Assembly: GCA_002811645.1 (NCBI GenBank)
Contig: PDIP01000122.1
Span: 96,098-160,097, forward strand
DNA from: Corallochytrium limacisporum Hawaii
Lineage: Eukaryota > Protista > Pluriformea
DNA: 64,000 nucleotides
Direction of reading: 5' to 3'
Positions 15,262 to 36,887 of the stretch are shown here, piece after piece (position 1 is the stretch's first letter; the number at the start of each line of letters is the position of its first letter). Both the position numbers and the translations under genes were made by a program. Below the pieces are notes generated by a model. That model was given only the letters and a program-made list of their open reading frames with translations. It was not told where the DNA came from and did no database searches.

Positions 15262-18200
15262 CTAAGGTTCAGTTTTCTTCGCAGTTGTGTAGAGCGCAGA
15301 GTCAGTGGCAGCCTTTTGACGCGAGCTACCACCTGCGGATGCACGAGCCTCTGCGCTCTGCGGTTCCTGAGCAGGTGATTCTGTGGCAGGCTGGGCCGAC
15401 CCTGCGGTCTGCTGTGTGACATGAACACTACCGTAGCCTGCCTTCTGCGCGGCAGCGGCCTGCTTTGCGGCCCGGCGGCCACCTTTGGCAGCTGACGATT
15501 TGTTGCCCCCGCCGCGGCGGAAAGTACCGCGCAGAGTTCCACGCTTAGTGCCACGGGCGTGCTCCTCACGATCGATCGAGACACCGTAGGCGGTTATTAG
15601 ATCGCTAATTTCGTCGGCGGACCGGGATGTGAACTTGACGCTCACTGCTTCTCCAGTAGCGGCGGCCCGTCCTTTGACAACAATCCGATCGTCCCTGGCG
15701 TACCAATTCGAAATATCGCCGTAATTGACCCGTGTGAGCAGCCCGCGATTCCTGGCTTCGTAGATTTCAATGCGTTCTGGACTGATGCCAATGACAATGG
15801 ACTTGGACGACTTACCAAAGACCTGTTTGCCATCAAAGTAGGCCACGCCAGCTGCGGAATGCTTCTTGAGCAGGTCAAGGAGCGATCGCTTAGCCTTACC
15901 AGCGGGAAGGGAACGATTTTCGCGGTACGCCTTCTGGAAATCAAGCACAAGTTGATCCATATCTTGATTTGGCAAGAGATCAGTGGGCATCAAACGCTGT
16001 ACACGACGCTTGACCTGCGATGTGGTCGGTGGCAGATCATCCCCGTACTTGACGATGTACTGGTACACCGCACACATAATCGCCTCTTGTCGACTCACGT
16101 CGTAGTAGCCCTTATGTAGATTGGGAATGGTCTGCCAGTAGTGGAACAGATTGTCTGCAACAGGGTCTTCACCTATCTCATCCGCACGCCATGCACGTCG
16201 CCGGATCAGGACGTGGAAGGGTGCGTCAATCCGAATGTTATTCACCACGATCACACGGTTCATGAAATCAAAGAGGAAGCAGTCACGGTGCATGCATGCG
16301 GTCAGACCTTCTTCTGGGAACCGCACAAAGAGCGCAAAACCGTCTAAACTGCGGAAGTCCAGGTCATGGGCAACCTGCGTGAGCAGATCTCCGCGTCGCG
16401 TGTAGCTGAAGACTTCATAGCGACGGTAGGACGTATCGGGTAGGTGTACCTCGACATGGATTGGCTTAGCATTGTTGCGCACCGATTCATACTCAAGCGG
16501 GTGTAGCAGAGATTCGCGCTTTGGAAGGCGGCGTATCTTGTGGAGGCGAGTCAAGCAGGCCGCGGCAATGCGACGGCTGCTGTTGCAGTTCAGGATGGAT
16601 TCAATGTAGCTAATCAGAATTGGTGTCGGGTATGTTACACCACATAACGCAAACATGAGCTCCCAACCCTTGGCTTCACTTACCGTGTTGCTATTGTTGG
16701 TGATCTGCTTGGTCACCTGACTAAAGATCTCATCGCGCAAGGCATCCACCTTGATGGCCAGGCCAACGACATTGTTGAGTAATTCAAAGTCAGAGACGTT
16801 GGATTTCCGACTCATGTCCCCCATGAAGCGTAGAATGGAACGATTACCGGCCAACGCGGCCTTCTCCAGCTCCGGATCTTCGGCCACATGCTTTAGGCAC
16901 GCCTTAGGCAACTCATTCTTGTCCCATTCCCAGGGCAGTGTTACGTTCTTCTTGCGATCCGGGCGCTGAGTAAAGTAGTCTGCTGCAAACTCTTCTAGAG
17001 TGTTGTGCTGGAACACTGCCTGCACAAAAACTAGGGAAGAATTAGAGATGACATTCATCATCTCCGGGGTTGGCTTCTCATTCACGGGCAGAACATGGAC
17101 GTAGGAGAGAGGAAAGTAACCCGCAGCACCAGTGCGCTCGCATTCGCCATAGCACAGACCGCGCCCCTTAGTTGGGCGCTTGAGTATGGTGATCAAATCT
17201 CCCGGGCGGAAGCTAAGCAGTGACGGATCGTCGGGCGACTTGAAGTTGACCTTGGCAACCGCATACTTCGAACGCTTGCCATGCTCACGGAGAATATCAG
17301 TGATGAATTCCTTGAAATCATTCGACTCGCAAACCATAATGAAGGTGACACCGCTGAACGTGCGCACAATTATGGGTCGGGTTTTGTGACTGCCGAGGCG
17401 GTAGCCCTCTTCAATTGCGATAATGTCCGCATAGGCAACCTTGGACATAATTTCCAGATTCTCGTTAATCACAAAAATACCCATCCGTCCTACGGCTACC
17501 GCCACTGCATCGTCCGGTGAGTACGGCTTGAGGAACTTAATGTCCTTGTAGATGCGCGTGAATTGCAGGGGGTACTGCTTCACAATATAGTCAATCATTA
17601 ATTGCTGTACCTCCAAGCTGGAGGCCTTCCGTTGGGCAAACGAAGAGTTCTTGATCACTTCCGCCGCGGCACGGATCCACTTCTCTGGCTTAATCTCATC
17701 GCCCTGAGGCAGCCATCCTGGGATGACTTCCTCAATATTCCGAGCATTGCGCTTGGAGATGCCACCGAACTCAATGTATATGCGCATTGCCAAATAGTTG
17801 ACCAAGACTTCGTCACGCGGTGGGTAGGCACCAGAAGCCACACCAAAGGTAATCTGCAAGTACTCCAGTTGTACACTGACAGCATCCAAATCCTCGTTCC
17901 AGGGAGGGAACATCTCCTTCTTGTAGTAAATGACGAAGCGATTATCACGTGCAGGAATGCCCATCTGTTCTCCGCGGCGTTCTGCCCGGGCAACCCAATC
18001 AAGGATCTTGTTGTTGCCACTGCCAATGCAAGTGCCAATGCCGGAGACACTGATAAAGAGAGAAAATCCGTAGCGGTTCTGCTGGCGCAGTTGACTCTTG
18101 ATCATATGCACTACTTCCTTCGCGGTAGTGCTCATGTCAATCACAAAGTTGTGGCTGCGGTCATCCACAAACATAACCTTGATTGCAATCGGTTGGCGTA

Positions 18201-21200
18201 ATTTGACCATGTTTGTCTCGTAGACTGATGGAGAGTGTAGCCGTGGACCGTTCATGATGCATCTTTCCAGTGTGTACTGTGCACGCTCGACAAACTTCCG
18301 TGGCGCAAAGTACAGGACTGCACGAAGTGTGGGCAGGAACCGCTGGGACGGGGGGAAACAACCCATGACCAGGATCAGCAAGATGAAACCACGGATGCGA
18401 CTGGACGCAGAAGGATTGCGGTGTAGCTGCTTGATGATCTGGCAGAGAATCTCATCGCGCATGTTAGGGTCCACAATGCCGGGTTCAATGATGGCTCGCA
18501 GGCGTCCGTTCATGGCTCCCGGTTTGCGATCATCGACCACAATATCATCCTCCTTGCGCAAATCAGATGCCTCGTGAGCATGGAGGCCACTGAGCTGACC
18601 AAGGGAACTGACGCTGTCCCTGTCGTCGTCCTTTTTCTTCTTCATCAGGCCAAACAATGAGCCACGGGAGCTGCTCCGGCTCATTCCGCTGTCGCCATTT
18701 AAGTCCCCGAGACTGATGTTAGAGCCGCGCTTCTTCCTGCCATCCTTGTCTTGGCCCATGCCATTAAGCGAAGTATTACTGCCACGAATGGAGCTAACCA
18801 GGGATGAATTGGACAGGCGGCCCTCCTTGCGTGCATTCTTGCTCTTTCTGCAAGGTCGGTTGTCCACAGGGCTGTCGAGATCGGCATCTTCAGCTGAGAT
18901 TGCGAAGTACTTGGGCTCCACAATATCACCCATGAATTTTTGAATGTGCACAAAGATCTTGAGGGCCCGTCGACGCATCTGCTCCGTACGTAGAGCCAGC
19001 AACGGACGCTTGAGCGGTTGACGCGTGTAGAACGGGTCGAGACCATTAAAGTACTGACGTGCAAAGAGCTTGAAATTATTTGCGGAAATGTCGTCAGCAG
19101 GCTCCGGATCGGTCTCCATTATCGAAGTTGTGTTCTCACCCTCCTCCTCATCGTCCTCAACAATCGGCTCTGGTTCCTGCTCTAAGAAATCGAAAGCACT
19201 AGAAATCATGGCAGTAGCCTGCATGAGCATTATATCATCCATCTGATTGGCATTGTACTGTGCCATGCGCAAAGCCCGAGCCTCATCCTGTGCCTTAATG
19301 TACTTTTGCTGAGCCAGCCACTGGCGCACCAGGTACCCTTTACTCATTGCCGTGAGCTTAGCCATGGTTTCGCGGAACAGTCTAATTCGACTAGCGCCCT
19401 TGTAAACACGCCAAGCATTCTGAAGCTTCCGCACGCATACGCGGAGGTATAAATATTGTTCTCGAGCACGAGCGCAGCGGTACCATTTCTGTATGGCAAT
19501 AGTGGCACTCCGTTTCTCAAGGAAGTGCTTCCGGTCAAGCCATGCGCGTGCAGCCCGCTGGATTTTTACGACGTACTTTCGCAGTGCCATTCCCTTCACG
19601 CGGCTCAGTTCTTCCGCCTGTTTCATCTTCAGGAAGACCTTCGTGTATCCGATCTGCCAGTCCTGGTCCGGTAGCCCCTTGTTCAGAATTTCCTCACACT
19701 TTTCGTGCATCTCTACATTGCGGAAGCGGGCACTCGGAGCTACAATCCAGAACACATTCACAAAGTCGGCAAACTCGTAACGGATAGCGTAGCCGTTCTT
19801 GCGCACATTGATAGTCTCCATCATACCAGAGTATCGCAGCTGCTTCAGGACCAAACCGGATTTGAAATTCAGGGGCTTCTTTTCAGTGTTGGGTTTCACA
19901 CAGCGAATAAAGGAAGGCTCAGCTTCAGCCAGCGTTTTCAGTAGAGACTGCAGAGACTTGGCAAAGCGAGCAGCAACTGACGTGCCTTTTTTCTTTGCAC
20001 TAGCGCCCTGCTCAATCTCGCGAATCTGGTCCCTGAAAAGCTCAGTCAGTAGCGATAGATTAGAGTGAGTAACGACCCTAAGCAGATCCTGACCAAACCG
20101 ATTCTTGTTCTTTTCCAGGAACCCCTCACAGTCGTAATGGACATCGCCAGCGTAATGATGCACACCGAATACCGTGTCCTGACCGGGTAGCTTCTGATAG
20201 TACGGATCCTTGTTGTGGTTATCTTCAAGCTTCAGGTAGAGGGACTCATCGGTACCACGGGGGAAGAAGGTCTCTTCGTCAATCAGGTTGATAATACTAA
20301 CTGGGCTATTAAACAACATCTTGAGACAAGGCTCATTGTCTTGGAAATCCAGCGTTTCCCAGTTGATGCCTTCCTCCCGATAAATGTCCTGCTCAATCTT
20401 GAACACAAACTGCACAAAAACCTGCTGCAGGGCTTCGTTCGCGTAGTTGATACACAACTGCTCAAAAGAATTTTGTTCAAAGACTTCAAACCCGAAAATG
20501 TCCAACACACCAATGCGTTGCCGCGTTGACGCTAATCCCTGACTAATCTTCATATTGATAGCATCTACTACTTCACTGAATAGTGACGCATAGACACCTT
20601 GGATCAGAATCTGTACATTCTTGGCAGCCTCGGCCACAGAGATGGCATTCTTGTATGTTTCGTGGCGTAGCTTGGTGGTGCGGACACAAATTGCGTCCTC
20701 TAAATCAGACTTCTCCAAACCCAGTAGCGAGAGTGCTACCTGTAGATGTGTAGAATCCTTGAGACTGGATCCATCTCCCTTTCCTGTAAATTCCAAGTTA
20801 CCCAAATGCAACAACAGGGCCAAAACTGTAAAGTAATCATCCATGCGATCGTCTGAAATGTTCAGTGCTTTCATACCAGCGATGACCTCTTGAAAATCCA
20901 CTGCATCATCGACACCGTCAATGCTTACACAATCACCACCAGTGAGAATCTTGAAGTCCTTGACGTTCTTTAGGAACAATCGACTCTTCAATGTTTCGCT
21001 CGCGCCCGCCACCAATTGGTAGAAAATATGGTAATTGCGCTCTCCCTTGGACTGAAACGTCAAACGACTACGTTCCAAAAGAAACTGTTGTGCTGACGCA
21101 TGTGTAATATTACCACCCTTGAACTCTACCGATAAGAACTTACCGAAGCGGGAGGAGTTGTCATTACGAAGGGTCTTTGCATTTCCTAGTGCCTCAAAAA

Positions 21201-21765
21201 TTGGATTCGTCGCAGTCAGGAGACTTTCAATATCACTAGCTGCCCGACTGCAAAATATAAAGTAGCGCAGAGCGAGCTTGGTAGTCTCGGTCTTTCCTGC
21301 ACCGGACTCACCGCTAATCAATAGAGCCTGTGGCTTGGAGTACTTGCGCATGCGCTCGTAGGCCTGATCACACACGGCGTAGACGTGTGGGTCACGGTCC
21401 TGCAGTTCGTTTCCCCGGTATTGTATCATGACTTTCTCTCCATAAATATCAAGCTGCTTGTATGGATTCAGTGCCACCAAAATCTGTGCCGTATATGTGT
21501 AAATGATGCCCTCCTGATATCTCTGGCGAAGATTATGCAACAGACCTCCATCATGGAGTTCCGGTAGATCTATCATATCGTTGTAGTGCCGTCTCATAGC
21601 GGGATTCATTGGCCGCAATTCTTCGAATTTTTCCCTTGGAATGAGCAAGATCCTTTCATCTTCATCTCGTACTTTCATGCCACCATTTGTTAGCGACAGA
21701 ATACGGGCCCCCAAACGGACCTCGCCGCCAAGGGGAACCCAAACCCAGTCACCCTTTCGGACCAT
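15262..21765 (-). CDS. MYO7: Unconventional myosin, class VII-like (motor-IQs-MyTH4-FERM-SH3-MyTH4-FERM)
   Basis: GESGAGKTE, NDNSSRFGK, LDIFGFE; IQ motifs; two MyTH4 domains (KFMGD..RDEILCQ; RFMGD..RDEIFSQ); SH3 (LSFRPGDLI..GYFP); two FERM domains. Single 2167-aa ORF. Confidence 0.9.
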   Translation of the reverse strand: MVRKGDWVWVPLGGEVRLGARILSLTNGGMKVRDEDERILLIPREKFEELRPMNPAMRRHYNDMIDLPELHDGGLLHNLRQRYQEGIIYTYTAQILVALNPYKQLDIYGEKVMIQYRGNELQDRDPHVYAVCDQAYERMRKYSKPQALLISGESGAGKTETTKLALRYFIFCSRAASDIESLLTATNPIFEALGNAKTLRNDNSSRFGKFLSVEFKGGNITHASAQQFLLERSRLTFQSKGERNYHIFYQLVAGASETLKSRLFLKNVKDFKILTGGDCVSIDGVDDAVDFQEVIAGMKALNISDDRMDDYFTVLALLLHLGNLEFTGKGDGSSLKDSTHLQVALSLLGLEKSDLEDAICVRTTKLRHETYKNAISVAEAAKNVQILIQGVYASLFSEVVDAINMKISQGLASTRQRIGVLDIFGFEVFEQNSFEQLCINYANEALQQVFVQFVFKIEQDIYREEGINWETLDFQDNEPCLKMLFNSPVSIINLIDEETFFPRGTDESLYLKLEDNHNKDPYYQKLPGQDTVFGVHHYAGDVHYDCEGFLEKNKNRFGQDLLRVVTHSNLSLLTELFRDQIREIEQGASAKKKGTSVAARFAKSLQSLLKTLAEAEPSFIRCVKPNTEKKPLNFKSGLVLKQLRYSGMMETINVRKNGYAIRYEFADFVNVFWIVAPSARFRNVEMHEKCEEILNKGLPDQDWQIGYTKVFLKMKQAEELSRVKGMALRKYVVKIQRAARAWLDRKHFLEKRSATIAIQKWYRCARAREQYLYLRVCVRKLQNAWRVYKGASRIRLFRETMAKLTAMSKGYLVRQWLAQQKYIKAQDEARALRMAQYNANQMDDIMLMQATAMISSAFDFLEQEPEPIVEDDEEEGENTTSIMETDPEPADDISANNFKLFARQYFNGLDPFYTRQPLKRPLLALRTEQMRRRALKIFVHIQKFMGDIVEPKYFAISAEDADLDSPVDNRPCRKSKNARKEGRLSNSSLVSSIRGSNTSLNGMGQDKDGRKKRGSNISLGDLNGDSGMSRSSSRGSLFGLMKKKKDDDRDSVSSLGQLSGLHAHEASDLRKEDDIVVDDRKPGAMNGRLRAIIEPGIVDPNMRDEILCQIIKQLHRNPSASSRIRGFILLILVMGCFPPSQRFLPTLRAVLYFAPRKFVERAQYTLERCIMNGPRLHSPSVYETNMVKLRQPIAIKVMFVDDRSHNFVIDMSTTAKEVVHMIKSQLRQQNRYGFSLFISVSGIGTCIGSGNNKILDWVARAERRGEQMGIPARDNRFVIYYKKEMFPPWNEDLDAVSVQLEYLQITFGVASGAYPPRDEVLVNYLAMRIYIEFGGISKRNARNIEEVIPGWLPQGDEIKPEKWIRAAAEVIKNSSFAQRKASSLEVQQLMIDYIVKQYPLQFTRIYKDIKFLKPYSPDDAVAVAVGRMGIFVINENLEIMSKVAYADIIAIEEGYRLGSHKTRPIIVRTFSGVTFIMVCESNDFKEFITDILREHGKRSKYAVAKVNFKSPDDPSLLSFRPGDLITILKRPTKGRGLCYGECERTGAAGYFPLSYVHVLPVNEKPTPEMMNVISNSSLVFVQAVFQHNTLEEFAADYFTQRPDRKKNVTLPWEWDKNELPKACLKHVAEDPELEKAALAGNRSILRFMGDMSRKSNVSDFELLNNVVGLAIKVDALRDEIFSQVTKQITNNSNTVSEAKGWELMFALCGVTYPTPILISYIESILNCNSSRRIAAACLTRLHKIRRLPKRESLLHPLEYESVRNNAKPIHVEVHLPDTSYRRYEVFSYTRRGDLLTQVAHDLDFRSLDGFALFVRFPEEGLTACMHRDCFLFDFMNRVIVVNNIRIDAPFHVLIRRRAWRADEIGEDPVADNLFHYWQTIPNLHKGYYDVSRQEAIMCAVYQYIVKYGDDLPPTTSQVKRRVQRLMPTDLLPNQDMDQLVLDFQKAYRENRSLPAGKAKRSLLDLLKKHSAAGVAYFDGKQVFGKSSKSIVIGISPERIEIYEARNRGLLTRVNYGDISNWYARDDRIVVKGRAAATGEAVSVKFTSRSADEISDLITAYGVSIDREEHARGTKRGTLRGTFRRGGGNKSSAAKGGRRAAKQAAAAQKAGYGSVHVTQQTAGSAQPATESPAQEPQSAEARASAGGSSRQKAATDSALYTTAKKTEP

Positions 21766-23791: not shown

Positions 23792-25027
23792 ATGACTGCA
23801 GAAGTGACGTACGGAGTAGTCTTTCTGCTCTCATATCTTTTTGCTCTCTATCACCGATTTCTGCCGAATCTTGAATCAAAGAGAGTTTATAGGCTTATCC
23901 TCGGCATATGTACAGTCTTATTGACCGCTGAGACAGTCTTGCACTATTTTTTAACATGCACTGTGGTCTATACTATACTTTTGTTTGGCCCGCGTAGCCG
24001 TACCACGGGATGGGCAGTATTCGGTTTCGTTTTCGGATATCTGTTAATCTTTCGAAAATTCTACAACGAGCTTGGTCTCCCGGCACCAGGACCAATTTCT
24101 AATGCCTTCCAACTGGTATTGTCGCTGAGGCTGATCGCATACGGATTCACTTACGTAGAGGGCAGTGGGACTACCAGAAGTCCGTCATTGTCGGTCTTTG
24201 ACTTTATGGCGTACGCTAGCGATCTGTTCGGAATCTGCTCCGGTCCATTTGTGTCATACGAAGCATACATAGATAGCCTGTCTCCAGTTGTAACCCGGAG
24301 GCAAACGCCATTCAGTGAGGCTTTTGCATGTTTTGCGGAAGGTACAATCTGGCTGGGGATCATGGCACTTGTCAACACAATCATGCCCTGGAGGCTTCTG
24401 TGGGATTCCGAGTTTGCACAAGAGTATAAGGGTTTGAGATATTTTGGATATTTAATCATTACGGGTGCCACCTTTCGGTTTAGATTCTACGGTGCGTGGA
24501 AACTTGCAGAGGGTGCATTTGTGCTAGCAGGCTACGACGCCACGAAACGTTCTCGAAATGCGGCCAATAACATTCACCCCTTGAAGATAGAGACATCAAC
24601 CAACATCCGGTCTATCATGCTGCACTGGAATGTGAGCGTGCAACGGTGGCTGACTCGCTTCGTGTACAAGGAAATGAACGCACCCCGCTTGGTTCGTCAG
24701 CTTGCTGTGGTGTCGACATCGGCCTTCTGGCACGGCCTAGAATTTGGACACTACGCCTTTTTCCTGCAACTCCCGCTCTATATCTACGTTGAGGAGAGTT
24801 TGGCAGCGGTAAACTGGCCCTGGCGGAAATGGCGCAATGGTGCTACTGTGGAGCGGATCCTTTCTTGGAGTCTTGTGATGCCATCGTTGGATTTTCTGGG
24901 CGTCTCTTTCATGGCCTTATCATTTAAGAGAACCATGGTTGCATGGCAAGCGGTATACTTCGGTCAGTACTGGGCTGCCTTCGTGCTAGTCTTGGTGTCT
25001 TCAATAATGAAACAGGCGGGATACTAG
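23792..25027 (+). CDS. MBOAT7: MBOAT lysophospholipid acyltransferase, MBOAT7/LPIAT1-like
   Basis: NAFQLVLSLRL, GPF, FRFRFYGAWKLAE, WNVSVQRWL, SAFWHG. Confidence 0.8.
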   Translation: MTAEVTYGVVFLLSYLFALYHRFLPNLESKRVYRLILGICTVLLTAETVLHYFLTCTVVYTILLFGPRSRTTGWAVFGFVFGYLLIFRKFYNELGLPAPGPISNAFQLVLSLRLIAYGFTYVEGSGTTRSPSLSVFDFMAYASDLFGICSGPFVSYEAYIDSLSPVVTRRQTPFSEAFACFAEGTIWLGIMALVNTIMPWRLLWDSEFAQEYKGLRYFGYLIITGATFRFRFYGAWKLAEGAFVLAGYDATKRSRNAANNIHPLKIETSTNIRSIMLHWNVSVQRWLTRFVYKEMNAPRLVRQLAVVSTSAFWHGLEFGHYAFFLQLPLYIYVEESLAAVNWPWRKWRNGATVERILSWSLVMPSLDFLGVSFMALSFKRTMVAWQAVYFGQYWAAFVLVLVSSIMKQAGY

Positions 25028-25114
25028 TACCATTTCCTATTTGTTAAGATAAATCAGACTTTATTTCGAATATGCGGCAGGTCCGCTACCAGAGCAGAGC
25101 AGCGTTAGTATGTT

Positions 25115-26086
25115 CTACATATCGCCCGCACTGATTGCAAGGGCCATTCGCAAGTCGTCGTCCATTTCCTCATCACTGCCGTCTGCGTAACTCTTGGTAG
25201 TGGCAGTTGTGCGACGGGACCGGTTGGACCGTGTGGCCCGTGCAGAAACTTCATCCTCCTTCTTCTGCTTCTTTGTCATCTTCGGCACGAAGTCTGTCAC
25301 AGATGCTTGCTTTCGACCCCTGGGTTTGGAGGCAGGAGTAGTCTTTGGCTGCCTCTTGGTCATGACAGGCTTTTCCTCTTCATCAATGTTCATGGCAGAC
25401 ACGTCATTCTCCTTTTCGGATTCGCCAGTAGCGCTGATGGTGCGCTCTGTCTTTCCCTCGTCGTCTTTTTCTGTCATTTCAGTGTCTTCCTTACCTGTTT
25501 CGACCTCTTCCTCGGCTGCCTCAGCCTCTTCCTCCATTGTAACCTCTCCGTTCAATGTTTTCAGTTTCATCTGCAGATATTCCAGCTCCCGACGCTTTCG
25601 CTCGAGGAAGAACTTAGCATAAGCAGCATCAGAGCCCAAATGTTCAATGTCTTCGCGCATATCTTTGATCACAATGCCCTGAGAGACCCGCTTGGAGATC
25701 TGATACTCCGTTCGGTTTTGTTCGCGCTTTTTCTTCATCAGCTCTGGAGCGAGGTAGCGACCGGTATTGACGATCATGCCGTTCTTACGACGAACATCAG
25801 GTCCATCAACGTCATTGTTCCTTTTACCAATTACTGTAGGATCCATAGAAATGCCCATGAACTCTGCAGTTGACTGCTGTCCAAGCATGCGCTGCATCTG
25901 AAGATTCAATTGGGAATTGCTCTTACCGAACATTGATCCCGATTCAATAATGTCGCTCCATTTTCCAATGCCAAATCGAACAGCGCAGCGACGCAGCATC
26001 TGACTCTCAAATTCGCTCCATCCTGGACTCAGTGTGAAGTTATATAGTGACTTAGAGTCATTGCTCACCACTGACGCCTTCATCAT
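25115..26086 (-). CDS. p1/AMTP1-like accessory subunit of the MTA1c/AMT1 DNA N6-adenine methyltransferase complex
   Basis: First ATG at 26086. SKSLYNFTLSPGW..FGIGKWSDIIESG..GKS..Q..LQMQRMLGQQSTAEFMG..RKNGMIVNTG matches the Myb/homeobox-like domain of ciliate p1 as recalled (SKSLWNYTLSPGW..FGIGKW..QRLLGQQS..RKN..INTG). Acidic/basic disordered tail. Confidence 0.85.
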   Translation of the reverse strand: MMKASVVSNDSKSLYNFTLSPGWSEFESQMLRRCAVRFGIGKWSDIIESGSMFGKSNSQLNLQMQRMLGQQSTAEFMGISMDPTVIGKRNNDVDGPDVRRKNGMIVNTGRYLAPELMKKKREQNRTEYQISKRVSQGIVIKDMREDIEHLGSDAAYAKFFLERKRRELEYLQMKLKTLNGEVTMEEEAEAAEEEVETGKEDTEMTEKDDEGKTERTISATGESEKENDVSAMNIDEEEKPVMTKRQPKTTPASKPRGRKQASVTDFVPKMTKKQKKEDEVSARATRSNRSRRTTATTKSYADGSDEEMDDDLRMALAISAGDM

Positions 26087-26340
26087 GACTTTCTCGAGAC
26101 CGATCCCTTTAGACAAGAAATCTCAGTTGCCATATTTTCCTTGGGAGTCCCTATTATTTTCTTTCTTGTCTTTCGGACCTAAACACCTTGTATTTGTCTT
26201 TACGCGACTAACATCTTGGCTCAAAACAGTTCCTTTTCACTTTGTGGGACTCATGCGCACTCCGGCGGTCACTTGTTTGCCCGCCATTGGCATATGTTCC
26301 AGAATTCCCTCAAGTCGTCGGCCCTGCCTCCCTTCGAAAA

Positions 26341-26348
26341 TTTCGCGC
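26341..26348. promoter_or_regulatory. E2F-consensus site upstream of the p1-like gene
   Basis: TTTCGCGC about 255 bp upstream of the ATG. Confidence 0.45.
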
Positions 26349-26650
26349 TCAAAAAAAAGGAGAGGTACCTTGCCCCCCAATCCCCGCCCTGGGGAGTCTA
26401 GCACTCTGTGGAGAATCCTTGAGGTGAAGGGAGTCCAATTGTTGGAGTGGGCGAAAAGGGAGGGAATGGGGATCAAGTGAGTATAGCGGTCGCCACCCTC
26501 AAAAGATAAATATGGGGAACCAACCGAAAATCCGTAAGATGGATTGGATGCTCCTTTGCGTAATGATGATGGAATGAAAATGATAGTGTCTTGGATTCTT
26601 GAAACTATAGTATGATGTACAATTTACAGGGTGCCCTCTACCAACCGAGA

Positions 26651-27556
26651 TTACTTACTCTGCGGCATCTCCAGTGCTTCAAAGTGGCTCCGCGCATTGG
26701 CAATATTGAACAGAGATGCCGCCGATGAGATGCTGGTGTCAGACATGATGACCATAATGTATGTGTTGCTCGTGAAGGAATCGATGAAGGCAACAAAATT
26801 GCTGTTCTTCACTTCCATGTCTTCTAGTTTTGCCTGTGCCTTACTACAGCTGAGCTTGAATTGTTTGATAATATTTGAAATCTTCTCAAACCTGTGAACA
26901 TCCGGATGCTGCACTCGACTGACGTGTGACACTACCAAAAAAGTGGCCCGTTCGAACAGAACCACCTCGTCTGCTTCCATCAGCTGCGCAAATACCTTGA
27001 GATTGGCCTCCAACTGGTTGACGTTGGGCATCAGCGAGTACACGATAGACGACCACGCCCGGTACAGCGTCTCATCCCAAATCGACGTCCGAAAACATTC
27101 TACCTGCAAAGGTTGGGACCTTCGCTTCAGCTCGTAGTCCTTCTCAGCGAAAGTGGCATTACGTTCATCTTCTGGCACCAGATCCATCTTGTGAATCAAA
27201 CAAAAGATTTTTGCATTCTTACTGTTCTCCTGAATGGCCTTTAGGCATTCGTAATAGTCCGCCATGTCCTTCTCAAACTCCTTGCTCTCAATATCAAACA
27301 CATAAATCAAGACTTCCACGTTCTTGAAGATGTGATCGCGCTGGCTTGCAAAATATTTCTCCATGAACAGTTCCTGACCGCCACAATCCCAGAGGTTCAG
27401 AACTAGATTTCCCAAGAAGCGAACATGAGAGTGTTCAACATCAATGGTAGCACCCAAACGGCGTGTATCCCGAGCTATATAATTGGCAAAGATAATGGAC
27501 CGCATAGAGGTCTTGCCTGAGCCGCTCTTGCCCATCAAAAGCACTTTCTTCTTCAT
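26651..27556 (-). CDS. RRAGA: Rag GTPase RagA/B (Gtr1)
   Basis: [65 protein letters not shown]. Confidence 0.97.
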
Positions 27557-28282: not shown

Positions 28283-29716
28283 ATGCTTAGGCGTCGTAAG
28301 CGCACAACAACCGATCGTGAACAAAAAGATCAAAGCAGTTACGTAGTAACCAAGAAACAGAAGGCCTCAGTGAGTCTGACGCAACAAGTCTTTGGCAAAT
28401 CGAAAGGAGAAAACGTCGATATCAGAAAGACTTTGCAGGCAGTGATAGTGCCCGAGGAATCCAAGAAAGAAACTTCTGAAATTGTTCCAGCATGGCATGA
28501 CTCAGACGATGATGAAGATATTATTGACATAAATACAGTCGCGGGACGACGGAAATTGCGCAAGAACGAGGGCGAGAAAGTCGTGACGGGCATCCAATAC
28601 GAAGGACGGTTGCGGGTGTTGTACAAACAGCTTCATCCACAGCCTGCCTGGGCTCAACTCCGTGATGGCGTGAACAAGTATAGCGGCACCATGAGTACCA
28701 TCACAGAGGGACTAAAGCGTGTGAGCGAGTTATCCACGGACCGTCTGAACGTCAGCCGTCTGGGCGACCTCGAACTCCAGCTTGACGTTGTGGCTAAGAG
28801 CTTGAGCTTCAATCCTCACTCCCGAATGCTCGCAGTGGGGTCCCTGGACCGTCATGTCCGTGTCTTTGAGATTGATGGTTTACACAATCGCATGCTCTTC
28901 AGCGTCAAAGTTGCAGACCTACCCATCCACAAGATCGCTTTCCACAGAACAGGCAGGGAAATTATCATATCCGGACGCCGTCCTCACTTTTATGTACTGC
29001 AGATGGCTACGGGAGCAGTGAGCAAAGTCTCGCAAGTGCTTGGTGCCCAGGACGAGATCACCACCCTGGAGAATTATAGCACAAGTCGGAATGGCAGGTT
29101 TATCGCGTGGACCGGCAGCGAGGGAGCTATCTATGTGCTCAACGGCCGCAGCAAGCAGCACTTAGACACTCTGCGCATCCAGGGACAGGTCAGGACCATT
29201 TGCTTTAATCAAGATTCTTCTCTGCTCTTTGCAGCAGGTACTGCGGGTAAGGTCTTTGTGTTTGACACGAAGACGCTCAAGTGCGTCCACACGTTCCAAG
29301 ACCAGGGCAGTGCATTTGGCGGTGCCAATGTCAGTGCAATTGCTGTGGATCCGAAGAATGAGACTATTTGCATCGGATCTGACAGTGGTGTGGTGAACAT
29401 CTATGACCTGGACGTGGTACTGGTGGAAAAGAACCCAAGCCCGCGAAAGTCTCTGATGAACCTGACCACTTGCATTGCTGGTATTGTGTACAGCCCGGAT
29501 GGTCGCATTGCTGTGTTCTGGAGTAAAGAAAGAAAGGACAGCCTGCGCTGTTTACACACGGCGTCAGGCACAGTCTTCGGCAACTGGCCCACCGCTAAGA
29601 CACCGCTTGGTTACGTCGCGGACGTGGTATTCAGCTGCAATGGTGGCATTTTATGTATTGGTAATGCCAAGGGGAAGGTGCTCCTCTATCGCCTCAAGGA
29701 TTGGAGTGAGATTTAA
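28283..29716 (+). CDS. UTP18: U3 snoRNP/SSU processome WD40 protein UTP18
   Basis: ATG at 28283; PAWHDSDD, RRKLRK..YEGRLR..PAWA, GSDSGVVNIY, NLTT, TVFGNWP, GNAKGKVLLYRL. Confidence 0.92.
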   Translation: MLRRRKRTTTDREQKDQSSYVVTKKQKASVSLTQQVFGKSKGENVDIRKTLQAVIVPEESKKETSEIVPAWHDSDDDEDIIDINTVAGRRKLRKNEGEKVVTGIQYEGRLRVLYKQLHPQPAWAQLRDGVNKYSGTMSTITEGLKRVSELSTDRLNVSRLGDLELQLDVVAKSLSFNPHSRMLAVGSLDRHVRVFEIDGLHNRMLFSVKVADLPIHKIAFHRTGREIIISGRRPHFYVLQMATGAVSKVSQVLGAQDEITTLENYSTSRNGRFIAWTGSEGAIYVLNGRSKQHLDTLRIQGQVRTICFNQDSSLLFAAGTAGKVFVFDTKTLKCVHTFQDQGSAFGGANVSAIAVDPKNETICIGSDSGVVNIYDLDVVLVEKNPSPRKSLMNLTTCIAGIVYSPDGRIAVFWSKERKDSLRCLHTASGTVFGNWPTAKTPLGYVADVVFSCNGGILCIGNAKGKVLLYRLKDWSEI

Positions 29717-29801: not shown

Positions 29802-32114
29802 TCATGCAGGCGGTGCCATGGTCGACAGCAGACGACGGTACTCTCCTGGATAAGCATTGCGGTACATGGCAATCGCCCAAGTACACCAGATCATAGGATA
29901 ATTCGAATAATGAATGGCACAGGTGCGGTTGAAGATGCCTACAATCTCCCGCTGAATCCATTCTCCAGTCACGGGCTGCTGTTTATCCATCAACCATTGA
30001 ATTGCCCGGTTGATGGCGGTGGTGTTCGGATGCCGGGCTTCGACTAGTGCCATGACTGCCCAGGCCGTCTGTACCGGAGAGCCGTCCTCGTCTCCATCCT
30101 GCCACTCTCGAGTGGCGCAGGATGTGACATCCTCACTCCAACAGCCGTCCGTCATCTGGTGTTCGATGAGGAATTCACATGCAAGCTCCAGGCCGTCGCT
30201 GGCAGTGCCACGATCGAAGCGTTCGCCATTTCCGTGGACTAGAGCCTGCACGCCGAAGAGCGTGCCGTACGTGAAGTTCACAGCCCAGAATCCTTCCCAG
30301 CTTCCATCTGGACGCTGGCGGCGGCGCATGAATTCAAGACCACGTTCTATGGCGCGATCCACGGTTGTAGCGCTGATCTTTTCGCTAGCGCTGCCGCTGT
30401 TGGTCCGCAGATGGCCTTCCGACCGGTATTGTTGCAGGCAACGCAGGCAAGTAGAGGACAACTCGACGTGCGAATAGTCCACCATAATGTCACCAAAGAC
30501 CTCCGCAGGGTTGAGGATTTCCCACCAGTCGCCACCGCGTTTTTCTTCATAAGTTGCCCAACCACCGTCATCGTTTTGCATTTCAAGGATGCGGCAGATG
30601 CCTTCGTCTAGGAGTTGATTCGGAGGGAAGGTCAGACCATACCGCTCCCGACGCTCTTCTCCAGTCATAAGGGCCATAATTGCCTCAGCACTGCAGTCTG
30701 TGACAATCCAACCGCACTGACGGTTGGAAAAGGGGAACGATCCGTAGCTACTCACGCGATAGTGGCGCTCGAAGTCGGGGATGGGCTGTGGCTTCTGACA
30801 GCTCAACACAAAGCCAAGGCCGGCATCCAGGGTCTCCCTTAGCTGCTTTGAAACTTGCTCCGGTTTCTCATAGTCCAGAACTTCCAACAAGGCCCGGGCC
30901 ATGAAGCTCGCATCCCACAGTTGAGAACCGTTCGTTCCCATCGACTTCAAGCCCTCCGGGCTCATCCACAAGTAATCGTACATGCGTTCAAAATGCCGCT
31001 TCACCATGGGACATTCCTTACCATTGCGAGCTAGGTGGCAGAGCATGTTCATGGCTTTGCTCACAGGACCAATGTCGACGCAGTCTGAGGTACGGTCCTC
31101 GTGGGAGACCTGTTCGTAGATCTCTTCCAGTGCCCATTGCCGCATGGGGGCCCCACTGAATAAATAATCGTACGCATTGATGACCATGGTGGCAGCCTTG
31201 AAAATTGGGTGCACAGGACGATATACGTCCACTTCACACGAGTCCCACTTGGCAGATGACCAGTCGACGTTTTCGAATCCTTCAACAAAGAGATCTTCCC
31301 GAAGTTCGCGCACCAATGCACTTTCCTCGACGCTAAACCGCTTGCCAGCCACATAGCCCATTGGCAAGTATACCATGCGGCTGTGACACCACATACGCGA
31401 CGGGTGAAGCGGGAATTGTTTGGGCAGTAACCAAAGTTCTTGTAGGACTCCATTAAACCCATCCCAGCTGTATAAATTCATCACTGCGAGCCAGAATTTG
31501 CCCCAATTTGGAATGAGTCTCAGACCACCGTGCTCAAGGATCCATTGCCGTGCCATACGCATTTCCTCTCGCTCTCGGTCCACTCCGAGGATACGTAGAC
31601 AGACATATGTTAGACCGGTGCCGAACATGGTCGGGTGCTGACCCACAAATAAACCCCATCCCCCGTACTTGGTGTGACCATCGGCCGCTGGTTCTTCGGC
31701 ATACTGGAAGGTATTGAGCATGTACCGACGGATTTCTTTGACCTGCGCATCGCTAAAACAGAGACCAGCGGCGTAGACTGCAATAATCTCACCGTGAAGG
31801 GTGAAGAGAGGGCCGCCGTAATCTCCAGCCCAGTGACCACAGGAGCTTTGTTGGGCTTTGATCATGTGCAGTGCCCGTGACAGATATGGGTCACCCTTAA
31901 CCACGGATTCGCTGAAGCTTGCGAAGTCCTCGTCACGATGAAAACCCATATGCCAGCGAGTGAGCTCATCCCTTTGGCGTGAAGGCTTCTGGGGTGCGTC
32001 ATATTCCCACCATTGTTGTCCATCGTCCACGTGCAGCTGCCACTTACTGAGATCTGTCTCAGCAGGCAACTCCCGACCGAAACGGCGCCTGTGTGTTGTC
32101 ACGTTTGTTTGCAT
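29802..32114 (-). CDS. LSS: Oxidosqualene cyclase, lanosterol synthase type
   Basis: YGGPLF, MWCHSRMVYLPM, QW repeats (QNDDGGW, QRPDGSW); GTNGSQ and CGWIVTDCSAE give the Thr/Cys/Val lanosterol signature. Confidence 0.93.
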   Translation of the reverse strand: MQTNVTTHRRRFGRELPAETDLSKWQLHVDDGQQWWEYDAPQKPSRQRDELTRWHMGFHRDEDFASFSESVVKGDPYLSRALHMIKAQQSSCGHWAGDYGGPLFTLHGEIIAVYAAGLCFSDAQVKEIRRYMLNTFQYAEEPAADGHTKYGGWGLFVGQHPTMFGTGLTYVCLRILGVDREREEMRMARQWILEHGGLRLIPNWGKFWLAVMNLYSWDGFNGVLQELWLLPKQFPLHPSRMWCHSRMVYLPMGYVAGKRFSVEESALVRELREDLFVEGFENVDWSSAKWDSCEVDVYRPVHPIFKAATMVINAYDYLFSGAPMRQWALEEIYEQVSHEDRTSDCVDIGPVSKAMNMLCHLARNGKECPMVKRHFERMYDYLWMSPEGLKSMGTNGSQLWDASFMARALLEVLDYEKPEQVSKQLRETLDAGLGFVLSCQKPQPIPDFERHYRVSSYGSFPFSNRQCGWIVTDCSAEAIMALMTGEERRERYGLTFPPNQLLDEGICRILEMQNDDGGWATYEEKRGGDWWEILNPAEVFGDIMVDYSHVELSSTCLRCLQQYRSEGHLRTNSGSASEKISATTVDRAIERGLEFMRRRQRPDGSWEGFWAVNFTYGTLFGVQALVHGNGERFDRGTASDGLELACEFLIEHQMTDGCWSEDVTSCATREWQDGDEDGSPVQTAWAVMALVEARHPNTTAINRAIQWLMDKQQPVTGEWIQREIVGIFNRTCAIHYSNYPMIWCTWAIAMYRNAYPGEYRRLLSTMAPPA

Positions 32115-33647: not shown

Positions 33648-36600
33648 TTATTCTTCACCTTCGCCCACAATGTCGGCCTCGGCCCTGTCTGCGTCTCCCT
33701 CAGTGTGGGGCTCTTCGGCAGCGTTAGTTTCCGCCTCCTCAGCACCCCCAGTGGAAGGATCGACAGCGGTTTTTGGTGCGCTTGGAGCAGTGGCTGCAAT
33801 GTTACTCAGATTGCTCTTGAATGCCTTCAAGTGCTCGTCGTCGGCCAGCAGGGACATGTCCACCTTCTCTTCTAGTTGGTCAATCCAAGACAGCAAGACG
33901 CGAGCATCCTGGGGGATAAGCAGTCGGCTCAGCTCCTGCACGCACACCAAATACCTGACGTCTGCGTCTTGACTGCCGATTAGTCCAAAGGCACGCTTGA
34001 TCATACGCTTATGTACCTCGTTGACGGCATCCCGAGTCTTCAGATTGTCAATGCCGAAAGTTGGAGCCAGTTTCTTCACGAATGCAATGGCTGAATCATT
34101 GGACTCTTCAAGATGAATTGCTGTAGCTTCAAGGGCAAGCTGGGCAAAGTCAGCCGGTCCATCTTCACGCAGACGTTTGAAGAATTCTCTGTAGACTTGC
34201 TGGAACTGATCCTGGACCTGAGGATACATGGCTACAATGCCCGCAACCGAAACTGTAGGCATAATATCTGTCATTGCCATCTTGAAGACGCACGCAAGGA
34301 CCTTGGCGCCCGCTACCAAAGCCTCCTCAGTAACTTCCTCTTCCTCCTTGAAGACGATGGCGTCTACAACATGTTGCACAAGTTGCGCTCTCACTGTGTT
34401 GCTGGGCGTGATCACATTGAGCTCCATCTCCAGAGCGTGTGTGTTGTAGGTGATACACAGGTCGCACATCGACAGAGACATCTCTGTCATCAGGCGATCT
34501 GATGTATCCGGATTTGTGACAATAGCTTCTATCTCCTCCATGATCTTGGCTACGTATTCTGCAAGTCCACCATCGCGATCCTTATCAGCAGCTGCCCAGA
34601 AAACATTTTGGACCAATCCCTCTACGGCATATGACACAAGGTCATCGGAATCATTCTTGCGGCTCTTGACAATCTCCAACAAGTGATTCAGGATCTCAGG
34701 CTGATTGAGGATCGAGTGATGGAGGATGAGCGCGTGCGCCATGCTGACCGCCAGTTCAACGTCGTACAGGGCTTCCTTCTCGTTCTCAGCAGCAGTCTGC
34801 AGCTTTGCAGTAACGGTTTGGCTGAGCGAGTGCAGACTTGCTTGCATGCGGCTGGACAGAGGCTCACCTAATTTGAGCAGGGTGATATAAGCTTTGCTGA
34901 TTTGCAGGATCACGTCGCGACTTGGGTGCTTGAGGAAGGTCTGGTTGAACAGATTGACAGCAGTTGTGACGGTCTCAATTGCGTCGGCGTCGCCGAGGAG
35001 ATTGATATCGAAGTCTTCGACGAGGCCAACCAGGTTTGCAAAGGCTTCTGCATCGCTGCTGAATCGATCGAGAAAAGCAGACCATTCAGCGAGCACAACT
35101 TGTGTCACATGACGTCGCTTCTCGTCGTAGTCTTTCTGCTGCTTCTGAGTGAACTTTGTGGTACCACGGCGTCCCGGTAGATCTAACTTTCCGCAGTATT
35201 TCTTCACAGAGTACACGAGCATGTCCACAAGAGTGCGCTCGATGTCGGCAGAGATCTTCGGTAAATCGTGAGACTGCAGCAAGGCAACAAACTCTTCGTA
35301 ATTTTTGATGGCCGAGAAAGCATTCCACAAGGTGTCAATGTAGTAAGCACTTTCCTGAACATCCGGTGCCTTGGAGACCATGAAGCTCGCCAACGCCACA
35401 ATATCCTTCTGATCAGTTGTTAAACGGCTCTCCAATTCCCGTGACGCCTTTGCACCCTTTGCCTTCCTAGACGACTTTTGCTTATCCAAGGCGTCTTCAA
35501 TAAACCGAGATCGGGTGTCCTCAACGAGATATGTGCGAAGGTGACGAGCACCGGCCCGACTGATACCACGATCTTCACAGAAAACAAGCAAGCAAATACC
35601 CTCGATTTGCTCCTCGCTTAAAGCGTCTTCGAAGGAAGCGTTCATCAGCTCTACTGTCTTCATGGCTTCAACTGCAACAGATGCCTCGATATCGTTGACC
35701 ATCTCCACAATCCTGGCCTTGAACTTCTCCACAAATAGCCGAAGACGATCCAAATGGCCCTTTTGCATAACGGTGTTCAGAGACTCAAGCGCAGTGTGGC
35801 GAACTTCCTTGGCCTTGTCACTCAGAAGCCATCCAATGTACTTGAGGAACTGATCGCTGAAGAAGTAGTCAGGCAATGCAAGCATCCAAACGGAGAGGCA
35901 TGAGAGGGACATTTCACGGATCTCAGGGGCTGAGTCACGGTAGCGATGTTGGAAGGTACCAGAGAACCATTGCTTTTGTAGAATATCCCACACAACTTCA
36001 TTCCGCTCTTCCATTGACTCCAGCTGTTTTTCCATGTGAGTCCTCCGATCAGTCTTTGTCTTTTTGCTCGAGGTTTTCTTCTGTTCTGTACTAAGTGTCT
36101 TGCGCAACTGTTCACATTCGCGAGTATTTTCGGCAATGTAAGCAACCATTCCGTTCATAATCATGTACGCCACAAACGTCGAAGTGTGACGAACTGCACG
36201 GACATCACTAAGTGTACCCTGAATAACCCATTGTGCAAGGTCATCGATGACAGTGCGATGTATGTTGGAAGAAAGGCTCAGAAGTCGTTGCACGAGGCTG
36301 GTCCAGAACGCATCGAGATTGTTGCGAAGAACCTTGGTTTCCTTAGCGGACGCATTCTTCAGTTTATATTCAGCTCCTGCGCTCTCAGGAATCGAGTCAA
36401 CTATTTCCGCCATAAGTTCTTGTACTTCTGACGCTTCAAGATGCGCTGCACTGCTTACTCCGCTCTCACATCCGCACAATTCCAAGTGAAAATTTATCAA
36501 CTCCGTCACAGCAGCAGCTGATTTCTTCTCTTTGAACAGATCAATGATGTCAGCGACGGTGTTCTCCACGGCAGCATCCGCTTCGAGAAAGAGACCTAAA

Positions 36601-36887
36601 AAACTGTCTTTACGCTTTGCGGGCTTGCTTGCCTGCTTGCGTGCAGGTCGCTTTGCAGGCTGAGCAGGCCCCGTGGCAGCTCGTTTCCCAGAAGATTTGT
36701 TACTCTTGGTGGACTTGCTCTGTTTCGAAGCATTCTGTGCGCCTTGATCATCCTGATTTCGTGTCTTCGCCCTCTTCGGTGTCGTATCTTCTCCAATGTT
36801 TTCCAAGACGCGCTTCACAGGTTGCCGCGACGAGCGGCGTGGACCTTCCTGTGATTCCATAGGTTCTGATAGAGTTAGTGCAGGCAT
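33648..36887 (-). CDS. STAG: Cohesin subunit SA/STAG (Scc3)
   Basis: ELINF..CGC, RAVRHTST, FQHRYRDSAPEIR, FFSDQFLKYIGWLLSDK, FKARIVEM; HEAT-like helical body. Confidence 0.93.
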   Translation of the reverse strand: MPALTLSEPMESQEGPRRSSRQPVKRVLENIGEDTTPKRAKTRNQDDQGAQNASKQSKSTKSNKSSGKRAATGPAQPAKRPARKQASKPAKRKDSFLGLFLEADAAVENTVADIIDLFKEKKSAAAVTELINFHLELCGCESGVSSAAHLEASEVQELMAEIVDSIPESAGAEYKLKNASAKETKVLRNNLDAFWTSLVQRLLSLSSNIHRTVIDDLAQWVIQGTLSDVRAVRHTSTFVAYMIMNGMVAYIAENTRECEQLRKTLSTEQKKTSSKKTKTDRRTHMEKQLESMEERNEVVWDILQKQWFSGTFQHRYRDSAPEIREMSLSCLSVWMLALPDYFFSDQFLKYIGWLLSDKAKEVRHTALESLNTVMQKGHLDRLRLFVEKFKARIVEMVNDIEASVAVEAMKTVELMNASFEDALSEEQIEGICLLVFCEDRGISRAGARHLRTYLVEDTRSRFIEDALDKQKSSRKAKGAKASRELESRLTTDQKDIVALASFMVSKAPDVQESAYYIDTLWNAFSAIKNYEEFVALLQSHDLPKISADIERTLVDMLVYSVKKYCGKLDLPGRRGTTKFTQKQQKDYDEKRRHVTQVVLAEWSAFLDRFSSDAEAFANLVGLVEDFDINLLGDADAIETVTTAVNLFNQTFLKHPSRDVILQISKAYITLLKLGEPLSSRMQASLHSLSQTVTAKLQTAAENEKEALYDVELAVSMAHALILHHSILNQPEILNHLLEIVKSRKNDSDDLVSYAVEGLVQNVFWAAADKDRDGGLAEYVAKIMEEIEAIVTNPDTSDRLMTEMSLSMCDLCITYNTHALEMELNVITPSNTVRAQLVQHVVDAIVFKEEEEVTEEALVAGAKVLACVFKMAMTDIMPTVSVAGIVAMYPQVQDQFQQVYREFFKRLREDGPADFAQLALEATAIHLEESNDSAIAFVKKLAPTFGIDNLKTRDAVNEVHKRMIKRAFGLIGSQDADVRYLVCVQELSRLLIPQDARVLLSWIDQLEEKVDMSLLADDEHLKAFKSNLSNIAATAPSAPKTAVDPSTGGAEEAETNAAEEPHTEGDADRAEADIVGEGEE

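What the first reader, a model, noticed from the sequence alone, without database searches (positions are those of the whole stretch)
25115..26086. 6mA methyltransferase subunit p1/AMTP1 with a PIP-box-like motif and a UIM: possible DNMT1-style replication/ubiquitin-coupled adenine methylation
Seen: the N-terminal domain matches p1 of the MTA1c/AMT1 complex. The tail has RKQASVTDFV (25286-25309), which fits the PCNA PIP consensus QxxhxxF and resembles p21 RQTSMTDFY, and ends in DEEMDDDLRMALAISAGDM (25118-25174), a good ubiquitin-interacting motif. An E2F site lies at 26341. Established: AMT1/MTA1c writes symmetric ApT 6mA in ciliates and other unicellular eukaryotes and is absent from animals; DNMT1 uses PCNA and ubiquitin binding for 5mC maintenance. 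Inference: in this lineage p1 may tether the 6mA writer to replication forks and ubiquitinated chromatin. I do not recall either motif in ciliate p1.
Basis: partly seen in the sequence, partly recalled or inferred. Interest (0 to 1): 0.85.

Follow-up and report, generated by a model that had tools for sequence, protein, structure and literature searches.

The report
Ubiquitin-binding tail on adenine methyltransferase subunit
This gene encodes a known DNA-binding subunit of the adenine (6mA) DNA methyltransferase of single-celled eukaryotes, and its tail ends in a probable ubiquitin-binding helix; related subunits in fungi, green algae and other protists carry such modules too, which suggests an undescribed and testable link between ubiquitin and 6mA writing.

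Summary
The ORF is a true, intronless p1/AMTP1 (PDB E=4e-29 to Tetrahymena p1, 0.4 to p2). The genome, almost certainly Corallochytrium limacisporum (6mApT published), also has AMT1, AMT6/7 and p2. All three motifs lie where stated. The UIM is the best-supported part: Pfam does not call it, but p1 tails of distant eukaryotes carry UIM-like (5 vs 0.2 expected), MIU-like (6 vs 0.05) or UBA modules (11 vs 0.06), and a profile of these helices retrieves almost only known ubiquitin-binding helices from the PDB. I found no paper describing this. The PIP-like motif is weak: one aromatic, not a degron, seen in no other p1. PCNA coupling of this complex is already published, through ciliate AMT6, whose PIP loop is missing here. 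The E2F site is half of a real E2F+CHR element (25 copies vs 0.7), also upstream of RAD51, CDC45 and CDC6; all four subunit genes have the E2F core, and Capsaspora p1 peaks at G1/S. 'DNMT1-style' holds only as analogy: no UHRF1-type SRA or DNMT1 was found. No binding is shown. The scan noted p2, AMT6/7 and the E2F/CHR code elsewhere in this genome before.

The parts
25115..26086 (-). p1/AMTP1 coding sequence, 323 aa, no intron seen
25667..26059 (-). Conserved p1 core (aa ~10-140): Myb/homeobox-like DNA-binding domain. K42, Q65, R66, Q71, K101, K118 and N107-T108-G109 match Tetrahymena AMTP1 functional residues; the last two clasp-loop residues and Y63 differ
   Evidence: pLDDT about 90-98 from aa 21 on
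25493..25630 (-). Long helix aa 153-198, probably coiled coil; a similar helix follows the core in most p1
25160..25492 (-). Disordered acidic/basic tail aa 199-309
   Evidence: AF2 pLDDT about 45-53
25286..25309 (-). PIP-box-like motif aa 260-267 (Q1, V4, T5-D6, F7, V8), basic residues upstream; non-canonical, not a degron, not seen in other p1
25172..25216 (-). Basic...Tyr...acidic short motif aa 291-305, recurrent in p1 tails, function unknown
   Evidence: 11 of 91 tails vs 2.9 expected
25118..25174 (-). UIM-like helix aa 305-323 (acidic run, L312, A315, S319, D322) at the C-terminus
   Evidence: not called by Pfam
26333..26348 (-). E2F + CHR-like composite promoter element about 250 bp upstream of the ATG; may also lie in the 3' UTR of the upstream RagA gene

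Best explanation
The protein is the p1/AMTP1 subunit of a complete AMT1 (MTA1c) complex that writes and maintains symmetric 6mA at ApT (shown by homology and gene content; 6mApT in C. limacisporum is published). Its folded N-terminal half clamps DNA as in ciliates. Its disordered tail is a recruitment arm, and the terminal helix binds ubiquitin (inferred). Most likely it reads a ubiquitin on chromatin or on a chromatin-bound machine, for example ubiquitinated H2B/H2A.Z at transcribed 5' nucleosomes or ubiquitinated PCNA behind the fork, and so concentrates or retains the writer on hemimethylated linker DNA. The complex is made ahead of S phase under E2F/DREAM-type control (inferred from promoters; measured for the Capsaspora orthologue). 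The PIP-like motif may add weak PCNA binding, but that is optional and lineage-specific. My odds: p1 identity 0.99; helix binds ubiquitin 0.7; used for chromatin recruitment if it binds 0.65; PIP functional 0.3-0.35.
For: p1 identity. AMT1 with DPPW, AMT6/7 and p2 in the genome. Two MT-A70 genes only, as published for C. limacisporum, with 6mApT and no 5mC (PMC12695648). In 91 representative tails: UIM-like 5 vs 0.22, MIU-like 6 vs 0.05, UBA 11 vs 0.06. UBA confirmed by Pfam in chlorophytes. The helix is kept in 8 of 10 named Mucorales while its flanks diverge, six of them found after the patterns were fixed. The helix profile against the whole PDB gives 8 of 9 hits in ubiquitin-binding proteins: ZFAND2B, Rpn10, Hrs, MINDY-1, Rabex-5, ataxin-3. 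Modules are scattered over the p1 tree, at least 13 changes. Other p1 tails carry PHD or Tudor readers; Capsaspora has both a UIM-like helix and a PHD. E2F+CHR regulon. Capsaspora p1 is periodic at G1/S (PMC7098662).
Against: No binding was tested. Pfam UIM models miss this helix, and the helix alone finds nothing in the PDB. A profile built without it scores it only 8.7 bits, second of 122 local proteins. The PDB profile test is partly circular, since the helices were first picked by UIM/MIU patterns. About three quarters of p1 relatives have no such module, including Chromosphaera p1 and Tetrahymena p1 (not hit), so it is not needed for 6mA writing in general. No ubiquitin ligase for the mark is identified: no SRA domain, BRE1 inconclusive. 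The tree is weak (136 columns) and cannot tell gains from losses.
Confidence: 0.5

Rival explanations
1. One reading: in this lineage p1 is a bipartite PIP + UIM reader of (ubiquitinated) PCNA, as in translesion polymerases, SPRTN or ZRANB3 (own knowledge). It takes over the replication-coupling role that the AMT6 PIP loop has in ciliates.
For: The motif shares I/V-T-D-F with the validated AMT6 PIP (PMC11761967) and has Q1 with basic residues upstream, in a disordered region. The single AMT6/7 here lacks the ciliate loop, and no other subunit has a PIP pattern in a plausible position. Among about nine real ORFs with QxxhTD[FY], only p1 has this basic flank. E2F+CHR promoter and G1/S expression of the orthologue.
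Against: V at position 8. PIP patterns are not enriched in p1 tails (canonical 1 vs 0.3, loose 3 vs 5.1) and are absent from Capsaspora, Chromosphaera and fungal p1. The DNA pattern is not enriched genome-wide (31 vs 26). The loose pattern occurs about once per 1000 residues in this proteome (55 in 53,640).
Confidence: 0.2
2. The ubiquitin-binding module controls the complex's own turnover or activity rather than its targeting: coupled mono-ubiquitination, protection from the proteasome as by the C-terminal UBA of Rad23 (own knowledge), or hand-over to p97/proteasome.
For: The chlorophyte UBA and several of the helices sit at the extreme C-terminus. The best PDB look-alikes are proteasome-linked UIMs, Rpn10 and ZFAND2B. 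Periodic expression implies regulated turnover.
Against: The same tail position holds PHD and Tudor chromatin readers in other lineages, sometimes together with the helix, which fits a recruitment arm better.
Confidence: 0.17
3. An ordinary p1 whose tail motifs are chance patterns of an acidic/basic disordered region, or helices that bind a partner other than ubiquitin.
For: No Pfam call; short motifs; 0.6% and 2% shuffle rates for patterns chosen after the fact; most p1 lack them.
Against: Folded UBA domains above the Pfam cut-off in a whole clade, and a conserved helix in Mucorales, are not chance. Three unrelated ubiquitin-binding types at the same position of one protein family are hard to explain otherwise.
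Confidence: 0.13

Closest known systems
Tetrahymena/Oxytricha p1 (AMTP1) of MTA1c / AMT1 complex (PDB 7F4L, 7YI8, 8XYL, 9O6K)
   Same: Core domain about 45-50% identical, same fold, most DNA-binding residues kept; the same four subunits are in the genome.
   Different: Tail carries a UIM-like helix and a PIP-like motif; the Tetrahymena chain is not hit by the helix profile. Clasp loop ends differently (R110, Y111). One AMT6/7 rather than separate AMT6 and AMT7.
Tetrahymena AMT6 complex recruited by PCNA (PMC11761967)
   Same: Same idea of replication-coupled 6mA maintenance; the PIP shares I/V-T-D-F.
   Different: There the PIP is on AMT6, has two Phe, is conserved and tested. Here it is on p1, has one Phe, is unconserved and untested. 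That paper does not mention ubiquitin.
DNMT1/UHRF1 maintenance of 5mC
   Same: A maintenance methyltransferase that may use PCNA and a ubiquitin mark.
   Different: Unrelated enzyme and modules (RFTS vs a single helix). No SRA domain or DNMT1 found in this genome, so the H3K18/K23ub route cannot be the same.
UIM/MIU helices (Rpn10, Hrs, ZFAND2B, ataxin-3; Rabex-5, MINDY-1) and UBA domains
   Same: Acidic run, hydrophobic residue, central Ala, Ser at +4, predicted helix.
   Different: Below Pfam thresholds; single copy; binding not measured.
Animal DREAM/MuvB E2F(CDE)-CHR promoter elements
   Same: E2F core followed by TTYRAA, upstream of RAD51, CDC45, CDC6, PDS5; E2F/DP and a two-TCR LIN54-like protein are encoded.
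   Different: Five bases separate the GCGCG core from the CHR in the pattern tested; factor binding not tested; here it includes 6mA writer genes that animals lack.

Membership tests
p1/AMTP1 | Best match to ciliate p1 rather than p2 or generic Myb | tested here: met
   E=3.9e-29 vs 0.13-0.37; Foldseek 4e-9
p1/AMTP1 | Conserved DNA-binding and clasp residues | tested here: met
   K42, Q65, R66, Q71, K101, K118, NTG kept; Y63, D110, N111 equivalents differ
p1/AMTP1 | Co-occurrence with AMT1, AMT6/7 and p2 | tested here: met
p1/AMTP1 | Physical complex with AMT1 and requirement for 6mApT | not testable with these tools
   6mApT published for C. limacisporum (PMC12695648); complex not tested
UIM | Acidic run, hydrophobic-x-x-Ala-hydrophobic-x-x-Ser-x-x-acidic, helical | tested here: met
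   aa 309-322; consensus from own knowledge; helix 310-320
UIM | Pfam PF02809/PF23625 cut-off | tested here: not met
UIM | Binds the Ile44 patch of ubiquitin | not testable with these tools
   only the indirect profile match
PIP box | Q at 1, aliphatic at 4, aromatic at 7, in a disordered region | tested here: met
   Q260, V263, F266
PIP box | Aromatic at position 8 | tested here: not met
   V267
PIP box | Conserved in orthologues | tested here: not met
   no close relative available beyond a near-identical strain
PIP box | Binds PCNA | not testable with these tools
   no complex prediction available
PIP degron (CRL4-Cdt2) | TD at 5-6 and a basic residue at +4 | tested here: not met
   TD present; +4 is T271 (definition PMC5131917)
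DNMT1/UHRF1-type maintenance | UHRF1 SRA reader-ligase and DNMT1 | tested here: not met
   no SAD_SRA match; one 418-aa DNMT2-like methylase without accessory domains
E2F/DREAM target promoter | E2F core plus CHR upstream of cell-cycle genes, enriched over chance | tested here: met
   25 copies vs 0 control and 0.7 expected; RAD51, CDC45, CDC6, PDS5 downstream
E2F/DREAM target promoter | Factor binding and periodic expression in this organism | not testable with these tools
   the Capsaspora orthologue is periodic at G1/S

The most novel reading that the evidence does not exclude
Ubiquitin reading is a recurrent, undescribed targeting layer of the eukaryotic 6mA writer, reached several times with different modules on p1 (UBA in green algae, MIU-like in Mucorales and some protists, UIM in this genome, Capsaspora and foraminifera). 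In this relative of animals p1 also took over PCNA binding, which makes it a PIP+UIM reader that couples 6mA maintenance to a ubiquitinated fork or nucleosome, convergent with DNMT1 but without UHRF1.
Probability: 0.25. Interest if true: 0.87.

Novelty: new variant of a known kind. Interest (0 to 1): 0.68.

Why it matters
How the AMT1 complex finds the linkers downstream of active promoters, and how 6mA is restored after replication, is worked out only in Tetrahymena, through AMT6-PCNA and AMT7-IBD2. Outside ciliates there is usually a single AMT6/7, and the two non-ciliate ones examined lack the PIP loop, so targeting must work differently. Ubiquitin-binding, PHD and Tudor modules on p1 tails point to p1 as that targeting arm and name ubiquitin as an input. 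This can be tested now in Rhizopus or Mucor (complex essential in R. microsporus, PMC12019607) and in Chlamydomonas. A positive result would tie 6mA to histone or PCNA ubiquitination and show a second convergence with 5mC maintenance.

Tried and rejected
Generic Myb protein or p2: rejected. Intron or annotation artefact in the tail: no joints in two RNA-type assemblies. PIP degron: rejected, no +4 basic residue. PIP as a family feature: rejected. Literal UHRF1/DNMT1 route: no SRA, DNMT2-like only. Pfam UIM call for the query: none in four tries; PDB search with the query helix alone: nothing. Strain variation: five differences in the ORF, two amino-acid changes in the tail, none in the motifs; too few to test selection. 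BRE1 search: only sub-threshold coiled coils. AMT6/7 survey: only two relatives returned, so PIP distribution on AMT6/7 is barely sampled. Beh et al. 2019 could not be read, so an earlier remark on p1 tail domains there cannot be excluded; databases already label chlorophyte orthologues 'UBA domain-containing protein' without linking them to 6mA. Literature searches for MTA1c/6mA with UBA, ubiquitin-associated, H2B ubiquitination or E2F found nothing relevant. No Syssomonas, Creolimax or Sphaeroforma p1 was identified by name.

Full report
Observation. The ORF at 25115-26086 (-) encodes 323 aa. Contigs of two probable RNA runs cover the whole coding sequence without a joint and end near 26107-26145, close above the ATG (RNA status is the tool's guess). 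Residues 4-135 match Tetrahymena p1 (7F4L chain E) at E=3.9e-29, while p2 and telomere Myb domains score E=0.13-0.37. The AlphaFold model has a confident core, a long helix at 153-198, a disordered tail at 199-309 and a final helix at 310-320; Foldseek returns AMTP1 first.

Organism and complex. The genome is 24.1 Mb in 286 contigs and intron-poor. It has exactly two MT-A70 genes: AMT1 with DPPW (E=2e-69 to ciliate MTA1 vs 8e-38 to METTL3) and one AMT6/7. A p1 profile also found p2. This matches the published content of Corallochytrium limacisporum (AMT1 1, AMT6/7 1, no other MT-A70), a species with ApT-biased 6mA (1.24 at ApT vs 0.13-0.55 in other contexts) and no detectable 5mC (PMC12695648). 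The species name is my inference from these matches and the genome size.

PIP-like motif. PCNA coupling of this complex is already known: Tetrahymena AMT6 binds PCNA through a conserved PIP box, and its mutation raises hemi-6mApT (PMC11761967). The AMT6/7 here lacks the long internal loop that carries it, and so does a fungal AMT6/7. No other subunit here has a plausible PIP. The p1 motif shares I/V-T-D-F with the AMT6 box, has Q1 and basic residues upstream, and is in a disordered region. Against it: position 8 is Val; +4 is Thr, so it is not a degron (PMC5131917); PIP patterns are not enriched in 91 representative tails (canonical 1 vs 0.31, loose 3 vs 5.1); Capsaspora, Chromosphaera and fungal p1 lack it. 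The coding pattern for QxxhTD[FY] occurs 31 times genome-wide vs 26 for the control; about nine are in real ORFs, and most others look structured, such as a kinase DFG. I give it 0.3-0.35.

Ubiquitin-binding helix. The helix fits the UIM consensus (own knowledge) but Pfam does not call it. The comparative result is stronger than the single motif. Among 91 p1 tails from 50%-identity representatives, UIM-like helices occur 5 times (0.22 expected from local shuffles), MIU-like DxxLAxxLQ helices 6 times (0.05) and UBA signatures 11 times (0.06); local background proteins give similarly low rates. The UBA domains are confirmed by Pfam and belong to chlorophytes such as Gonium, Bryopsis, Chloropicon, Ostreobium, Micromonas and Trebouxia. 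Helices occur in Capsaspora, the foraminiferan Bolivina, the labyrinthulid Mucochytrium, MAST-4 and Mucorales. Eight of ten named Mucorales keep the helix while the flanks diverge; the two Lichtheimia have short tails without it. The Mucor helix is 48% identical to the query's over the aligned stretch. A profile of 20 such helices, searched against all 177,635 PDB sequences, gave nine hits: ZFAND2B (E=3e-4), Rpn10, Hrs, MINDY-1, Rabex-5 twice, ataxin-3, a VWFA-domain chain that I take for another Rpn10, and one unrelated peptide; Tetrahymena p1 was not hit. This test is partly circular. Without the query in the profile, the query scores a modest 8.7 bits. On a weak tree of the core the modules fall in at least eight separate places, 13 changes minimum; gains and losses cannot be told apart, but UBA and single helices are unrelated structures, so convergence happened at least once. 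Other p1 tails carry PHD (Capsaspora, Ancoracysta) or Tudor/Agenet domains. About three quarters have none of these.

Promoter. The E2F site is followed by a CHR-like TTCGAA. The 16-base composite occurs 25 times in the genome (control 0, 0.7 expected). In the loci examined it nearly always points towards a gene 50-660 bp away, including RAD51, CDC45, CDC6, PDS5, a SWIM-finger protein and p1. E2F/DP and a LIN54-like TCR protein are encoded. AMT1 has a one-mismatch composite, and AMT6/7 and p2 have the GCGCGAA core 180-280 bp upstream, against a base rate of 3 in 46 genes (P between 3e-4 and 0.01 depending on the rate assumed). Independently, Capsaspora p1 (CAOG_02319) is among the 801 periodic genes, in the G1/S cluster, and one of its two MT-A70 genes (CAOG_04822) is periodic in the G1 cluster; the other is not listed (PMC7098662). 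First readers of this scan had noted the E2F/CHR code, p2 and AMT6/7 elsewhere in this genome; I had found them before that look-up and do not count those notes as support.

DNMT1 analogy. No SRA domain was found and the only C5-methylase is DNMT2-like, so the UHRF1-H3 ubiquitin route is absent. The ubiquitin source is open: H2B/H2A.Z ubiquitin fits the known position of 6mA in transcribed linkers next to H3K4me3; PCNA ubiquitin fits the PIP+UIM pair and the G1/S timing; self-regulation fits the C-terminal position. BRE1 could not be confirmed.

Novelty. The gene, the complex, 6mA in this species and PCNA coupling are known. I found no paper linking p1 or MTA1c to ubiquitin binding or to E2F control, with the limit that one key paper could not be read. 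It is a new variant of a known system, with a cross-lineage pattern that makes a specific, cheap experiment possible. Shown: identity, gene content, motif positions, enrichment and conservation of the modules, the cis-element. Inferred: ubiquitin binding, PCNA binding, the target mark and the effect on 6mA.

Noticed in passing
P0289 (AMT6/7 homologue, Logan contig), aa 557-574: An AMT6/7 relative ends in a UIM-like helix (Pfam UIM E=0.06), so the module may sit on another subunit in some lineages.
   Followed up: partly
P0100, P0108, P0210 (Tudor/Agenet); P0133, P0188, P0326 (PHD); P0187 (Tudor-like by eye plus UIM): p1 orthologues fused to histone-reader domains; candidates for direct H3K4me3 reading by the 6mA writer.
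   Followed up: partly
window 1916-2836 (-), 33648-36887 (-), 42602-44266 (-), 23792-25027 (+): The other window genes with a sense GCGCGAAA upstream are a RAD51 paralogue, cohesin SCC3/STAG, a 3'-5' exonuclease and an MBOAT acyltransferase.
   Followed up: partly
G000: No METTL3, METTL14, METTL4 or AMT2/5 found: the genome keeps the DNA 6mA writer but apparently has neither the mRNA m6A writer nor the ciliate de novo enzymes; agrees with the published table.
   Followed up: partly
L024, L034, L036, L006, L010, L018, L021, L027-L029: Several genes behind the E2F+CHR element have no Pfam match (or no clear ORF) and may be divergent cell-cycle or repair genes.
   Followed up: no
window 25027-25115 and 26129-26651: p1 and the MBOAT gene are tail to tail 88 bp apart, and transcript contigs run through; RagA-side contigs reach over the p1 promoter element.
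   Followed up: no
window 26500-26600 vs 26200-26500: ApT is dense just past the RagA stop (14 per 100 bp) and sparse around the p1 promoter element (3-5 per 100 bp), then denser in the first 200 coding bases; not tested against base composition.
   Followed up: no
window 15262-21765 (-), 29802-32114 (-), 28283-29716 (+), 26651-27556 (-): Neighbours: intronless MyTH4-FERM myosin (VII-like), oxidosqualene cyclase, UTP18-like WD40 protein (my reading) and RagA.
   Followed up: no
window 25172-25216 (-): A basic...Tyr...acidic motif just before the UIM recurs in 11 of 91 p1 tails (2.9 expected).
   Followed up: partly
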